DNA of 64,000 nt from Gracilinanus agilis (taxonomy: Eukaryota), in NCBI RefSeq assembly GCF_016433145.1, contig NC_058132.1, forward strand, positions 90,757,766 to 90,821,765. Reading direction: 5' to 3'. Positions within the stretch are counted from its first letter, which is position 1. Each line of letters starts with the position of its first letter. Of this stretch, positions 57,705 through 64,000 are shown one piece after another. Below the pieces are notes generated by a model. That model saw only the letters and a program-made list of their open reading frames with translations. It was not told where the DNA came from and ran no database searches. A program made the position numbers and the translations under genes.

Positions 57705-58290
57705 TCACCACAGGATCTTCTTAATCCTCAGGCAACAAATGATGAGGTTCTATGTGGGTGGAATAAGCAAATAAAAATTAGCAAGTAACACTTCCAGCTC
57801 AGAGGAGGGAGTCATGATTAGAATAGCTCTAACCATGATAGCGATGCCTATTTCCAATATGATCTTGTGTATAAGTATGGTTTCGTAGTACAGGGGTTTG
57901 CAGATAGCCACATAGTCATCAAAGGCCATGGCTAGCATCACTCTTGTGTCAGTAGTAACAGTTCCATAGACAACATACATCTGGGCAAAGCAGGAAGTAA
58001 ATGTGATGACACCATCACCTTACCAGAAGATGCTCAATATCTTGGGAGCTACTAAGTAGGTAGCCATGATGATGTCACAGCTGCCAGAGTGCACAGGAAG
58101 AGGTATATGGACTCATGTAGAGTACGGTCCACCCAGATCACAGTCAGAATCAAAATGTTCCCTACAATAGCCACATCATACATGAAGCTCAGTGGAGCTG
58201 CCAGCATGGGATGTGCCCCCTTCATTCCTAAAATACCCAAAAGGATGAATGAATTATCTCATATCTGGTTGTAAGGTGATGCCAATCTGA
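57705..58290 (-). pseudogene. OR52I-like pseudogene
   Basis: Minus-strand translation gives LASPYNQI*..SFILLGI, GNILILTVIWVD..LHESIY, PKILSIFW*, QMYVV, MAFDDYVAICKPL and LLANFYLLIPPT*. Start codon lost, frameshift near 58080, TAA at 58020-58022, and a ~330 bp deletion (junction ~57793) removing most of TM4-TM6. Confidence 0.9.
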
Positions 58291-59960: not shown

Positions 59961-60095
59961 GAAGCTAACTTCTTATTCTCATTCAGACTTCTCATTTCCT
60001 CACTTTTGGCCCATAGAATGGGGAAAACAAAAAGTTAGTGGAAGGCACCCCCTAGTTACTCATTGGCTCAAAGTTCCAGGAGGCATGGCCTAGAT

Positions 60096-60470
60096 CAGTG
60101 ATTGCGAACCTATAGCATGAGTGCCAGAGGTGGCCCGAAGAGCACTTTCTTTGGGCATGCAGTCACCCCCCCCCCCCAGAGTTCATTACTAGAAAGGCAG
60201 AGGGCCTCAGCTGACCTACTCCCTTCCCCCTCTCTACCATACCTGATGACATGTTTTCAGATCCCCAGCTCTACACCTAGCAGCCCAATGGGAGCACACT
60301 GAGGATAAGGCAAGCACACAGAACTGAAGGAGAGCAGAGTGCCCAGGCCACTCTCCTCCCCCTCTCTACACAAGCTGAGGACAGTCGTCACTTCATTCAT
60401 CACTCTGCCCAGCAGCCCAATGGGAGCGTGGGGTAAAGGGGGCCAGGGCACACCCTGCATTCAGTAGGGG
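60096..60470 (+). mobile_element. OC1-like hAT left-end fragment, truncated
   Basis: cagtgattgcgaacctatagcatgagtgccagaggtgg..., repeated agcagcccaatgggagc, preceded by gcctagat. Confidence 0.7.
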
Positions 60471-60599
60471 GAGGGATCATCCTTTTGTATTCATTGAGTT
60501 ACCTGCCTTTGTTTCCAGTTTCAGGAAAACCCTTGTAATGTGAAAGGGCTACAGCAGTCATTTATTGGACATAGGACTGGCTCTCAGTGAAAATGACAA

Positions 60600-60708
60600 C
60601 TCTACTTAAATATTTGCCTATTTAATGCCATAGCAATCGAACTACCCAAAAATTATTTCATAGAACTAGAAAAAAGTAGCAAAGTTCATTTGGAAGAACA
60701 AAAGAATC
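60600..60708 (+). mobile_element. Short L1 ORF2 fragment abutting the CpG island
   Basis: ctatttaatgccatagcaatcgaactacccaaaaattatttcatagaactagaaaaa...ttcatttggaagaacaaaaga (LFNAI.I.LPKNYFIELEK..FIWKNK). Confidence 0.7.
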
Positions 60709-61450
60709 CTCGCCTCTCGCCCTAGGCAGGCACTGCTCCACCCCCACCACCCCACTCCACGGCCCGCGGTCTCCGTGAGAACTGAAAGGCCGGCAGGTTT
60801 CTCCGGGTCCTGGATCATTGGCTCCGAGTTTCAGAGGGCGTGGCCTGGACCCTTATACCTGGTGCTGCCGGCCCCTAGAGCTGGCCGCTTCACTTTCCCC
60901 TTCTCTTTCCTCTAGTATCACTTAGTCCCTGGCCTGGTCCCAATCTAAAAGAGAGTCGGAAAGAGCCTGGAGCTTGGGCTGGGGGAAGGGAGTACGGAAG
61001 GATAAGGCAGGTGGTGAAAAAAGGTGATTTTTGAAGACAAAGACACCGGGAGAACAGCTAGCCTCAAGGACTCTTCCTGTCACAGAAGAGGAAAATGAAG
61101 TCCGGGAGATTCTGGTGGCGTGGCTCAGGTTCCTTAGGAGGGAAATGTCAGAGCCCAGAGGAGAGCCGAACCAGAGCCTGGGGAAGAGCTTCTTCTCCGC
61201 AAGAGCGTCAGCTGCAGGCTTGTTCGACGCTGGAGGAACTGAAGAAATTTAAGATTTATCTGCAGAACCATACCCCTGGGCCGGGCATCCTCCGGGGCCG
61301 CTTGGATGGTGCTGATCTCACAGAAATGCGGAACTCCTGGTCCGTTTTCATGGAGGCCTGGGAGCTGCCTTTGAACATCTGTAAGACGAGTCTGAGGGAG
61401 CTAAACGAGCGAGCGGAGCTGAAGGATTGCAAGGTAAAGGCTCTCTCTTG
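60709..61450 (+). promoter_or_regulatory. CpG-island-like promoter/first-exon region
   Basis: Sharp rise in GC and CpG relative to the flanks. Reverse CCAAT (ATTGG 60817-60821), GC box GGGCGTGGC (60836-60844), ttata at ~60853 and IRF-like TTCACTTTC (60889-60897). Confidence 0.6.
61095..61433 (+). pseudogene. Decayed pyrin (PYD) domain exon, NLRP3/NLRP12-like; net reading frame still open from ATG 61095
   Basis: Translation across frames gives SVSCRLVR / LEEL..KKFKIYL...GILRGRLDGADLTEM / AELLVRFHG / AWELPLNICKTSLRELNERAE, the six-helix PYD pattern. It has several small deletions and a donor-like AAG|gtaaag at 61433/61434. Confidence 0.7.
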
Positions 61451-61790
61451 GTATTCCCTCTCCTACTTCCACGCTTCCAACGGCCTGACCCCTTCCCTAT
61501 CTTCTTCCTTTTCTCTCTTCCTCCCTTCATCATTTGACAATGATTTCTCCAGTGACGGGAGATGATGAAAACGCAATGAATATTATTTGGAGGAATTTGA
61601 AGCGTAAAGTGCTGGGGAATCACCCAGAAGAGTGGGAGGAGCATCGACCAAGAGAAGTGATTTCATGGTAAATGGGGAAGAAAGACCGGGGACCCGGACA
61701 GACTACGTGACTAAGAATGAGCGAAAATTTCAACCAAGGAGCAATACTATCCTCCCCAAACACCAAAATTGACATATTTAAGAGTGAGGG

Positions 61791-61980
61791 GCAAAAGAGT
61801 GCCTAAGTGCCTCAGAGGGTAGAGAGCCACACCTGGTGATGGGGAAGGTGCCGGTTCAAATGTAACCTTAGACACTTAAGCCCATTTACCTAGCCCTTAC
61901 CATACCACTCTTCTGCCTTGGAAAAGATACTTGATACGGATTCTAAAACAGAGGGTAAAACTTAAAAAAAAAAAAAAAAA
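61791..61980 (+). mobile_element. SINE with internal deletion and A tail
   Basis: TSD agagtgaggg on both sides and a long A run ending at 61980. Confidence 0.75.
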
Positions 61981-62816
61981 GAGTGAGGGACAATAGAAAT
62001 AAAAGGGATGGAATGAGGGGTAACAAGATTTACAGGACAATAATAGACATCAGAAGGAAGAAACATTTTTCCATCTACTCTTTTTTTCCTTATTCAAATA
62101 TATTTTATTTTCCCAATTATGGGTAATGACAATTTTCAACATACGTTTTTCCGAAATTATAAGATACAAATTGCCTCCCTCCTTCCCTTCCTCCATCCTC
62201 CTTCCCTTCCTCCATCCCCCTTCCCAGAGATGGTAAGCAATTTGTTTTGTGGTTTTTTTAAGAATATTTTTCCATGGTTACATGATTCATGTTCTTTCCC
62301 TCCCCTCAAACACCCCCCCCCCCAGCCAGAGCAATTCCACTGGGTTTTACATGTATCTTTGATCAAGATCTATTTCCATATTATTGATAGTTGCACTGGG
62401 GTGGTTGTTTAGAGTCTACATCCCAAATCATATCCCCATCAACCCATGTGTTCAAACAGTTGTTTTTCTTCTGTGTTTCTACTCCCACCGTTCTTACTCT
62501 GAATGTGGATAGCGCTCTTTCTCATAAGATCCTAAGAATTGTTCTGAATCATTGCATTGCTGCTAGTAGAAAAGTCCATTAAGTTGGATTGTAGATGGTA
62601 AGCAATTTAATCTGAGTTAAACATGTATTATCATGCAAACCATACTTCCATAGTGGTCATTGTTGTAAGAGAATACATTCATAAAACCAAAACCCCAAAA
62701 TAAAAACATAAACTATTGTGAAAAAATTCTTGCTTTGTTCTGCATCTTGACTCCAACAGTTCTTTCTCTGGAGGTGGAGAGCATTCTGACATAAATCCTT
62801 CAGAATTCTCCTAGAC

Positions 62817-63032
62817 CAGCTTTGGAGAACTATTGGCACACATGAGGAGAGGGGGAAATGCTCCAGTCCCCCTCTTCCCAGCTGAGAACATTTTTTGCAT
62901 GTCCCACCCCTCTGTCCAACCACCCAAAGTGAGCACTTCCTCCCCTCCCCTCTTTGGGGGTAATGGAAGGGGCTCACTGGCAATTTGAAATTGCAGTTTG
63001 GACAGGTGAACTCAAAAAGTTCCCCCCCACTT
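62817..63032 (+). mobile_element. Degraded OC1-like hAT MITE inside L1
   Basis: Decayed termini (cagctttggagaactattggcac...aaaagttcccccccact) after cctagac; internal similarity to the 60096 and 42370 copies. Confidence 0.5.
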
Positions 63033-63309
63033 TTATATTTCTGAGAGTAGCTAAGTCTTTCATAGTTGATTGACATACAGTATTGTTGTTACTCAGTACA
63101 ATATTCTTCCAATTCTGCTTATTTCACCTTGTATCAGTTCATATAGATCTTTTCAACTTTTTCTAAAATCATTCTGTATTCCATCACCAACTTAAACCAC
63201 AATTTATTCAGCCATTCCCTAACTGAAGGACATCACCTCAATTTCCAATTCTTTGCCACCACAAAAAGACCTACCATGAATATTTTTGTACAAGGAGGTC
63301 TCCTCCCCC

Positions 63310-63497
63310 TTTTTTTTTTTTAAACCCTTGTACTTCGGTGTATTGTCTCATAGGTGGAAGATTGGTAAGGGTGGGCAATGGGGGTCAAGTGACTTGCCCA
63401 GGGTCACACAGCTGGGAAGTGGCTGAGGCCGGGTTTGAACCTAGGACCTCCTGTCTCTAGGCCTGACTCTTACTCCACTGAGCTACCCAGCTGCCCC
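63310..63497 (-). mobile_element. Young SINE, same subfamily as the 55917 copy
   Basis: Shares the diagnostic ccttaccaatcttccacctatgagacaatacac tail; TSD tcctcccc-T run. Confidence 0.9.
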
Positions 63498-64000
63498 TCC
63501 TCCCCTTTTTTTATAATCTCTTTGGGTTACAGACCTAGTAGCCTTATTATAAGATCAAAGAGTATGCACAATTTTATTGCCATTTGGGCATAGTTGCAAT
63601 TGGCCTTCAGAATGGTTGAATTAGGTCACAATATGTATTAGTATCCCCATTTTGCCATGTCCATTCAAACATTTATCACTTTCCTTTACTATCATATTAG
63701 CCAGTCTGATAGGTATGAGAGGGTACTTCTCTGTTTTTCTAATTTGCATTTCTCTAATCCAGAATAATTTAGAACATTTTTTCATATAATTATTGATGGT
63801 TTTGATTTCTTCGTCTGAAAATTGTTCATATCCTTTGACCATTTGTCAATTGGGGAATAATTTACATTCTCATAAATTTGACTTAGGTCTCTATAAATTT
63901 GAAAAATTAGAGCTTTATCAGAGAAATTTGCTAGAAAAAACCCTTTCCCAGTTTGTTGTCTCCCTTCTAATCTCGTTTACATTGGTGTTGTTTGTACAAA

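What the first reader, a model, noticed from the sequence alone, without database searches (positions are those of the whole stretch)
61095..61565. Decayed but still in-frame pyrin-domain exon at the edge of a class I OR cluster
Seen: ORF 61095-61565 contains LEELKKFKIYL...GILRGRLDGADLTEM...AWELPLNI...LRELNERAE. The missing PYD pieces are in neighbouring frames (SVSCRLVR at 61204; AELLVRFHG at ~61328). A -1 deletion after LTEM appears to be compensated by a second deletion (about -8) before AWEL, and an in-frame deletion appears to join two EEL repeats. The frame therefore stays open from ATG 61095 to a donor-like AAG|gtaaag (113 codons, phase 0). Known: this is the NLRP3/NLRP12-type PYD signature; PYD-only proteins act as inflammasome decoys, and PYD fused to TRIM domains defines pyrin/MEFV. 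Inference: this is a dead NLRP fragment, a marsupial PYD-only-like decoy, or a PYD exon spliced onto a downstream gene. Several deletions without a stop, plus retained CpGs, is unexpected for a long-dead methylated pseudogene.
Basis: partly seen in the sequence, partly recalled or inferred. Interest (0 to 1): 0.8.

Follow-up and report, generated by a model that had tools for sequence, protein, structure and literature searches.

The report
Broken pyrin-domain exon of a marsupial NLRP gene
This is the decayed first exon of an inflammasome-type NLRP gene that is intact in Australian marsupials; its open reading frame is most likely a by-product of decay, so the finding is an ordinary pseudogene relic with an unusually well-kept promoter.

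Summary
ORF 61095-61565 exists and carries pyrin-domain (PYD) motifs.

- **Family.** The exon belongs to a marsupial NLRP3/12-like group that I call clade A. In the devil, olfactory receptor (OR) sequences flank the one clade-A gene whose flanks were examined.
- **Lesions unique to the window.** The ancestral ATG now reads CTC. There are deletions of 16, 1, 8, 3 and 1 nt. The intact relatives show only in-frame gaps.
- **What the ORF reads.** It reads 5'UTR-derived sequence, helix 1 out of frame, helices 2-3 in frame, helix 4 out of frame and helices 5-6 in frame.
- **Donor.** It ends at the family's own splice donor, but in phase 0 where the family uses phase 1.
- **Chance and fold.** An open frame this long arises by chance in about 12% of cases. 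The ORF product is not predicted to fold as a PYD.
- **CpG richness.** It is the family's ancestral promoter island, kept at about the level of one functional devil gene.

Best reading (0.75): a pseudogenised NLRP first exon whose promoter island may still be unmethylated. Transcription, independent read support and the downstream exons could not be tested. The only read-mapping call failed, and just 2.6 kb follow the exon.

The parts
60400..61800 (.). CpG-island-like stretch covering the promoter, the exon and the start of intron 1
   Evidence: GC 0.49-0.55 and CpG observed/expected 0.41-0.63, against 0.38 and 0.13 for the whole window. All three functional devil genes have the same kind of island from -800 to +400 around their PYD exon.
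60809..60933 (+). Promoter block homologous to the promoter of devil gene A1. The conserved core 60886-60928 holds a GAAA-repeat motif on the minus strand. I read it as IRF/ISRE-like from memory; this was not tested.
   Evidence: Blastn against L001 9733-9842, 64% identity, colinear with the exon. The block aligns with devil A1 and koala A.
61095..61565 (+).
   Evidence: Chance estimate.
61120..61137 (+). Counterpart of the upstream start used by the devil A1 gene model (MAQVPW). Here it reads GTG GCT CAG GTT CCT TAG, so there is no ATG and W has become a stop.
   Evidence: Alignment A1 and the frame-0 translation.
61195..61197 (+). Position of the family's start codon. It is ATG in devil A2, devil A3 and koala, TTG in devil A1, and CTC here.
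61198..61242 (+). Helix 1 remnant in the ancestral frame (RKSVSCRLVRR), now out of frame with the ORF and ending at TGA 61240-61242. The 16-nt deletion lies between 61225 and 61232.
   Evidence: CRLVR is identical to devil A2.
61233..61328 (+). Helices 2-3 (EELKKFKIYLQNHTPGPGILRGRLDGADLTEM), where the ancestral frame equals the ORF frame. The 1-nt deletion is at 61327-61329.
61329..61352 (+). Helix 4 remnant. (A)ELLVRFH is in another frame and the ORF reads RNSWSVFM instead. The 8-nt deletion follows 61351.
61353..61433 (+). Helices 5-6 (EAWELPLNICKTSLRELNERAELKDCK) in the ORF frame. A 3-nt deletion follows 61381 and a 1-nt deletion lies at 61421-61423.
61431..61439 (+). Splice donor AAG|GTAAAG, homologous to the family's PYD-exon donor (G|GTAAGG). 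It is phase 0 here and phase 1 in devil A1, devil A2 and koala.
   Evidence: Protein junctions.
61626..62050 (+). Start of intron 1, colinear with intron 1 of devil gene A1 only
   Evidence: Blastn: 61626-61798 against L001 10677-10849 (69%) and 61978-62050 against L001 10830-10908 (75%). Alignment.

Best explanation
This is the pseudogenised first exon (the PYD exon), with its promoter, of an NLRP3/12-like gene of a marsupial group I call clade A. The group includes devil genes A1 to A3 and koala, wombat, possum, glider, wallaby, bilby, dunnart and antechinus genes. In the devil, the one clade-A gene whose flanks I examined (A1) has olfactory receptor sequences on both sides.

Shown:
- The exon lost its start codon and took five deletions, of 16, 1, 8, 3 and 1 nt.
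- Together these break the ancestral frame three times inside the exon and once more before the donor.
- The ATG-to-donor ORF is a patchwork: 5'UTR-derived sequence, two out-of-frame helices and two in-frame blocks.

Inferred:
- The ORF is not maintained by selection and does not encode a working PYD.
- The exon was under coding constraint for much of its history and died later. That would explain why its residues still look PYD-like.
- The CpG island is the ancestral promoter island. It has stayed unmethylated in the germ line, or was unmethylated until recently.
- The locus may therefore still be transcribed as a non-coding or nonsense transcript.
For: Descent:
- The only significant hit among 1.84 billion representative proteins is a devil NLRP.
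- The relatives are PYD-FISNA-NACHT-LRR proteins of marsupials.
- In a PYD tree the frameshift-aware read falls inside clade A (support 86/84). Its terminal branch is 0.78, against a median of 0.1.
- Promoter, exon and early intron are colinear with devil gene A1: window 60809-62050 matches L001 9733-10908.

Lesions:
- Alignments show five deletions unique to the window.
- Devil A1, devil A2 and koala show only in-frame gaps of 12 and 15 nt.
- The ATG is now CTC. The alternative upstream ATG of the devil A1 model is GTG here and is followed by TAG.
- The donor is phase 0, against phase 1 in the family.

Relaxed constraint:
- The window has 37 singleton substitutions, against 11-14 in the three functional exons.
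- Window-specific changes are spread 17:10:16 over codon positions. Devil A1 shows 3:4:11.

Earlier constraint:
- Pairwise dN/dS in the ancestral frame is 0.34-0.40.
- Few conserved residues are lost.

The ORF is not special:
- The probability that its non-ancestral stretches stay open is about 0.12.
- An ATG-ORF of 113 codons or more appears in 12% of shuffles of the island.
- The frame also stays open for 43 codons into the intron.

Fold:
- The ORF product gives pLDDT 55 and pTM 0.41, with residues 1-44 disordered.
- An intact devil PYD folded the same way gives pLDDT 78, pTM 0.65 and six helices.

CpG island:
- It is present at all three functional devil genes.
Against: - No expression data could be obtained, because the single read-laying run was lost to a filter.
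- Only 2.57 kb follow the donor. In the devil the NACHT exon lies 4.6-14.4 kb downstream. An intact gene body, or another gene using this exon, cannot be excluded.
- CpG observed/expected of 0.4-0.6 argues that the promoter is not simply dead and methylated.
- Five deletions is a high count for a short neutral period, while dN/dS of about 0.35 suggests long constraint. The timing is therefore not well resolved.
- Independent read support for the deletions is lacking. The one run that holds the exact sequence may be the assembly's own sample.
Confidence: 0.75

Rival explanations
1. The exon is still used. The retained CpG-island promoter drives a transcript whose first exon is spliced from the conserved donor at 61433 onto downstream exons. 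Those could be what remains of the NLRP gene, giving a PYD-less or N-terminally remodelled NLRP. They could also belong to a neighbouring gene, with this exon serving as a 5'UTR or alternative first exon.
For: - The CpG island is kept at the level of functional devil gene A1.
- A promoter block is shared with devil A1 and koala A.
- The donor GT is conserved in position and has a reasonable consensus.
- The ORF is open from an ATG to that donor.
- The window ends before any downstream exon could be seen.
Against: - The donor is in phase 0, whereas the family's exon 2 expects phase 1. The ORF would therefore not read into a canonical NLRP body.
- The frame that is in phase 1 at the donor has a stop 17 codons upstream and no ATG after it.
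- The window-specific substitutions show no codon-position bias.
- No annotated protein contains this exon.
Confidence: 0.15
2. It encodes a small PYD-only-like decoy protein, the 113- or 156-residue ORF product, that interferes with inflammasome assembly.
For: - The ORF has an ATG and is open.
- Helices 2-3 and 5-6 keep family residues.
Against: - Helices 1 and 4 of the six-helix bundle are replaced by unrelated sequence, and six residues between helices 1 and 2 are deleted.
- Pfam PYRIN is below its threshold.
- The AlphaFold model is poor next to an intact control.
- No homologous short protein exists in 5.8 billion sequences.
- The openness is within chance.
Confidence: 0.04
3. The indels are assembly errors and this is an ordinary intact NLRP first exon.
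For: - The substitution pattern still looks largely constrained: dN/dS is 0.34-0.40 and few conserved residues are lost.
- Five deletions in 240 nt is a lot.
Against: - The deletions of 16, 8 and 3 nt are not in homopolymers.
- Substitutions also disable the exon: ATG to CTC, the upstream ATG to GTG, and TGG to TAG.
- A sequencing run holds all sampled 31-mers of the exon, although it may not be independent of the assembly.
Confidence: 0.04

Closest known systems
Marsupial NLRP3/12-like genes next to OR sequences (devil P0002 'NLRP3', P0011 and P0014 'NLRP12-like'; koala P0016). Preprint 10.64898/2026.04.26.720791 describes an OR-flanked opossum gene, 'NLRP-OR52I1'; whether that gene is related to this group is unknown.
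   Same: - The PYD exon is homologous at the DNA level, 69-70% identical.
- The donor sits at the same position.
- Both have a CpG-island promoter, and a promoter block is shared with devil A1 and koala A.
- Both lie among olfactory receptor genes or relics.
   Different: - Here there is no start codon in the ancestral frame.
- There are four frame-breaking deletions.
- The donor phase is shifted.
- No NACHT or LRR exons are visible in the 2.6 kb that remain in the window.
Unitary or duplicated NLRP pseudogenes. [quoted passage not shown]
   Same: A decayed family member sits in a region where relatives are intact in other lineages.
   Different: This one keeps a CpG-rich promoter and, by chance or not, an ATG-to-donor open frame.
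PYD-only proteins (POP1 to POP3) of primates
   Same: A single PYD-derived exon stands apart from any visible NACHT exon.
   Different: POPs keep an intact six-helix PYD. This ORF lacks helices 1 and 4 and is not predicted to fold.
Human and mouse NLRP10 PYD (PDB 2m5v, 2do9), the best hit among solved structures
   Same: Weak in-frame similarity over residues 28-81 (E 0.027).
   Different: The apparent match to NLRP10 helix 1 is chance. The DNA alignment shows that this part of the ORF is out of frame relative to its true relatives.

Membership tests
Pfam PYRIN domain (PF02758), as a present-day protein domain | The translated ORF reaches the family's gathering score | tested here: not met
   14.6 bits against a cut-off of 22.9, E 0.037; only residues 47-78 match profile positions 12-45.
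Pfam PYRIN domain (PF02758), as a present-day protein domain | Six-helix death-fold bundle | tested here: not met
   The ORF product gives pLDDT 55 and pTM 0.41, with no helix 1. The intact devil PYD control gives six helices and pLDDT 78. Both are single-sequence models, so this is moderate evidence.
PYD exon of the marsupial NLRP3/12-like clade A, by descent | Nucleotide homology over the whole exon, with a shared donor and shared flanks | tested here: met
   Alignments. Colinear promoter and intron matches to L001. The composite scores 71 bits against the PYD profile. Tree placement.
Functional NLRP gene (PYD-FISNA-NACHT-LRR) | Intact start codon and uninterrupted PYD reading frame, in phase with exon 2 | tested here: not met
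   The ATG is now CTC. Deletions of 16, 1, 8 and 1 nt break the frame. The donor is phase 0 where the family uses phase 1.
Functional NLRP gene (PYD-FISNA-NACHT-LRR) | NACHT and LRR exons downstream on the same strand | not testable with these tools
   There is none in 61434-64000. In the devil the NACHT exon lies 4.6-14.4 kb from the PYD exon, which is beyond the window.
PYD-only decoy protein | Intact PYD ORF conserved as such, and expressed | tested here: not met
   The domain is disrupted. No short homologue was found. Expression was not testable.
Pseudogene | Disabling lesions plus relaxed substitution pattern relative to intact relatives | tested here: met
   Five unique deletions and loss of the start codon. 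37 singleton changes against 11-14 in the functional exons. Codon-position spread 17:10:16. The caveat is a pairwise dN/dS of 0.34-0.40.

The most novel reading that the evidence does not exclude
The ancestral CpG-island promoter is still active. From it the locus makes a transcript whose first exon encodes a 113-residue 'half-PYD' (helices 2-3 and 5-6 only) spliced to downstream exons. This would be an exapted regulatory product or a remodelled N-terminus of an NLRP, born from compensating frameshifts.
Probability: 0.08. Interest if true: 0.55.

Novelty: new member of a known kind. Interest (0 to 1): 0.2.

Why it matters
NLRP genes turn over quickly in marsupials and monotremes, and this relic marks one such loss. 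It suggests that the group expanded in Australian marsupials once had a copy in this genome's lineage too, although no intact member from American marsupials appeared in my searches. The practical value is for annotation. The open frame and the weak pyrin hit should not be called a PYD-only gene. The one feature worth following is the retained promoter island. It would show whether a dead immune gene's promoter stays unmethylated and active long after the coding sequence has gone.

Tried and rejected
- **NLRP10 first exon.** The best solved-structure hit was the NLRP10 PYD, aligned in frame through helix 1. I rejected this. True relatives and the DNA alignment show that stretch is out of frame, and the nearest family is marsupial NLRP3/12-like.
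- **Synteny from the devil A1 downstream flank.** Window 58064-59090 matches L001 53672-54574. This turned out to be an OR pseudogene relic present in both species, so it says nothing about the NLRP gene.
- **Short homologues.** A search with the ORF found none.
- **Window olfactory receptor look-up.** One OR encoded in the window is not on record. I did not pursue the species further.
- **Read mapping.** There is therefore no read-level or RNA evidence.
- **Sequencing runs.** Only one run holds the stretch, of unknown kind and possibly the assembly's own sample.
- **Rfam and tandem repeats.** Neither found anything relevant in 56-64 kb.
- **Pfam on the frameshift-aware read.** I left this out because that sequence has no reference and I did not paste it. 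A local profile built from 36 PYDs of proteins that carry PF02758 was used instead.
- **Other loci.** DNA for the possum and glider loci was not available.

Full report
**What is there**

The + strand carries an ORF at 61095-61565 (156 aa), with 113 codons from the ATG to AAG|gtaaag at 61433|61434. SVSCRLVR and AELLVRFHG lie in the other two frames.

Upstream, the window holds four intact olfactory receptor ORFs with class I hallmarks. That class assignment rests on motifs I know and was not tested. There is also an OR pseudogene at 57714-58258 on the minus strand. No long frame and no NLRP match follows the exon up to 64000.

**Is it a pyrin domain?**

Taken in frame, the ORF is only a weak match:
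- Pfam PYRIN gives E 0.037 and 14.6 bits, below the 22.9 cut-off, and covers residues 47-78.
- Against solved structures the best hits are the NLRP10 PYD (E 0.027) and the NLRP3 PYD (E 0.2).
- Among 5.8 billion clustered proteins no short relative exists.
- An exhaustive HMMER search of 1.84 billion representatives found one protein, a Tasmanian devil NLRP, at E 4e-7 with 57% identity over residues 45-107.

Searches from that protein recovered a set of marsupial PYD-FISNA-NACHT-LRR proteins annotated NLRP3 or NLRP12-like. They come from devil, dunnart, antechinus, koala, wombat, possums, glider, tammar and bilby. I call this set clade A. In the 120 best hits, American marsupials and Dromiciops were represented only by more distant groups. 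Monodelphis P0053, for example, is 48% identical to devil P0011.

**Nucleotide evidence**

I fetched the devil loci of three clade-A genes (L001 = A1, L002 = A2, L004 = A3) and one koala locus (L006). Alignment of their PYD exons with the window gives the lesions below.

| Feature | Window position | State here | State in relatives |
|---|---|---|---|
| Family start codon | 61195-61197 | CTC | ATG in A2, A3 and koala; TTG in A1 |
| Upstream ATG of the devil A1 model | 61120-61137 | GTG, then TAG five codons later | ATG, open |
| Deletion 1 | between 61225 and 61232 | 16 nt lost | none |
| Deletion 2 | 61327-61329 | 1 nt lost | none |
| Deletion 3 | after 61351 | 8 nt lost | none |
| Deletion 4 | after 61381 | 3 nt lost | none |
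| Deletion 5 | 61421-61423 | 1 nt lost | none |
| Donor GT | 61433\|61434 | phase 0 | phase 1 in A1, A2 and koala |

The functional exons show only in-frame gaps of 12 and 15 nt. The donor GT is conserved in position, and it is the last 1-nt deletion that shifts its phase.

The 'in-frame' deletion is actually 16 nt and frame-breaking. Two further deletions were missed.

A read-through with X at each break scores 71.0 bits over positions 3-82 of a 91-position profile built from 36 PYDs. The in-frame ORF scores 39.4 bits. In a PYD tree the composite sits inside clade A (support 86/84) on a terminal branch of 0.78, against a median of 0.1.

Promoter, exon and early intron are colinear with devil gene A1 only: window 60809-62050 matches L001 9733-10908.

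**What the ORF really reads**

From ATG 61095 the frame passes through these stretches in turn:
- sequence homologous to the 5' leader of the devil gene;
- helix 1, out of frame (QERQLQACST where the ancestral frame gives KSVSCRLVR);
- helices 2-3, in the ancestral frame;
- helix 4, out of frame (RNSWSVFM where the ancestral frame gives AELLVRFH);
- helices 5-6, in the ancestral frame.

The ancestral frame itself has no ATG and stops at TGA 61240-61242. The frame that is in phase 1 at the donor has a stop 17 codons upstream and no ATG.

**Is the open frame meaningful?**

- In this GC-rich island the stop frequency is 0.039 per codon.
- The stretches of the exon ORF that are not read in the ancestral frame stay open with probability about 0.12.
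- 12% of shuffles of the island give an ATG-ORF of at least 113 codons.
- The same frame runs open for 43 more codons into the intron.

Openness is therefore not evidence of selection.

A single-sequence AlphaFold model of the ORF product is poor: pLDDT 55, pTM 0.41, residues 1-44 disordered. An intact devil PYD folded the same way gives the six-helix bundle at pLDDT 78 and pTM 0.65.

**Constraint and timing**

- The window exon is 69-70% identical to devil A1, devil A2 and koala A. Those three are 81-83% identical to one another.
- The window carries 37 singleton substitutions, against 11-14 in the others.
- Window-specific changes fall 17:10:16 on codon positions 1, 2 and 3, with no bias (p 0.39). 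Devil A1 shows 3:4:11.
- Against that, pairwise dN/dS in the ancestral frame is 0.34-0.40, similar to A1 against A2 at 0.39.
- The composite also keeps most conserved residues.

Together this fits a gene that was constrained for much of its history and then lost constraint. With about 75 codons I cannot date the loss.

**The CpG signal**

GC is 0.49-0.55 and CpG observed/expected is 0.41-0.63 over 60400-61800, against 0.13 for the whole window. All three functional devil genes have the same island from -800 to +400 of the PYD exon, with observed/expected 0.37-0.59 in A1 and 0.5-0.87 in A2 and A3.

A promoter block at 60886-60928 is shared with devil A1 and koala A. It holds a GAAA-repeat motif that I read as IRF/ISRE-like from memory; this was not tested.

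The island is therefore ancestral, not a peculiarity of this copy. Its survival suggests that the promoter is, or was until recently, unmethylated in the germ line. That is an inference.

**Context from papers and earlier notes**

- Preprint 10.64898/2026.04.26.720791 reports five NLRP-like genes in the opossum. One of them, 'NLRP-OR52I1', is flanked by olfactory receptor genes.
- PMC13076529 reports frequent lineage-specific NLRP gains and losses in marsupials and monotremes.
- Earlier notes of this scan mention an NLRP gene 3.37 Mb upstream in the same genome with a possible 1-bp deletion in its NACHT domain. I could not check this.

**What could not be done**

- One run holds every sampled 31-mer of the exon, but it may be the assembly's own sample.
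- The window ends 2.57 kb after the donor. In the devil the NACHT exon lies 4.6-14.4 kb away, so the fate of the gene body is unknown.

**Verdict**

This is a pseudogenised PYD exon of a marsupial NLRP3/12-like gene, with its ancestral promoter island (confidence 0.75). The rivals are:
- the exon is still used as a first exon (0.15);
- it encodes a PYD-only decoy (0.04);
- the indels are an assembly artefact (0.04).

The finding is an ordinary kind of feature and of low interest.

Noticed in passing
window 57714-58258 (- strand): A class I olfactory receptor pseudogene with a frameshift near 58076 and residues of about 163-276 missing. It lies 3 kb upstream of the PYD exon. The devil has a matching OR relic at L001 53673-53783, downstream of its A1 gene.
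   Followed up: yes
window 61560-61700; L001 10640-10760: A stretch of intron 1, roughly 80% identical by eye over about 70 nt, is shared with devil gene A1 only. This is better than the exon's 69-70% identity. It ends in a donor-like ATG|GTAAAT. The devil copy has indels and a stop, so it is not coding. It could be a regulatory element or an alternative leader exon.
   Followed up: partly
L001 10001-10093 (devil gene A1, protein P0002): The devil gene annotated NLRP3 has TTG where its paralogues have the start ATG. Its model therefore begins at an upstream ATG that adds 31 residues. The window also lacks the ATG at that codon (CTC), which may be a shared older loss.
   Followed up: partly
L001, L002, L004 (devil chromosome CM109176.1, 565.8-566.15 Mb): Three clade-A NLRP genes lie within 330 kb in the devil. 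A2 and A1 are tail to tail. All three have CpG-island promoters over the PYD exon, which I would not have expected for inflammasome-type NLRPs. Germ-line or oocyte expression is a guess.
   Followed up: partly
protein searches: No clade-A NLRP from American marsupials or from Dromiciops appeared among the best 120 relatives. Every Australian order sampled has one or more. Clustering and the 8000-candidate limit could hide some.
   Followed up: no
window 60000-60600: A GC-rich stretch (0.52-0.53) with CpG observed/expected of only 0.07-0.11 abuts the CpG-rich promoter. Its nature is unknown.
   Followed up: no
same genome, 3.37 Mb before the window (notes s1-173145, s1-173194): Earlier notes describe another OR-flanking NLRP gene with a probable 1-bp deletion in its NACHT domain. 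If real, more than one NLRP at this receptor cluster may be decaying in this species.
   Followed up: no
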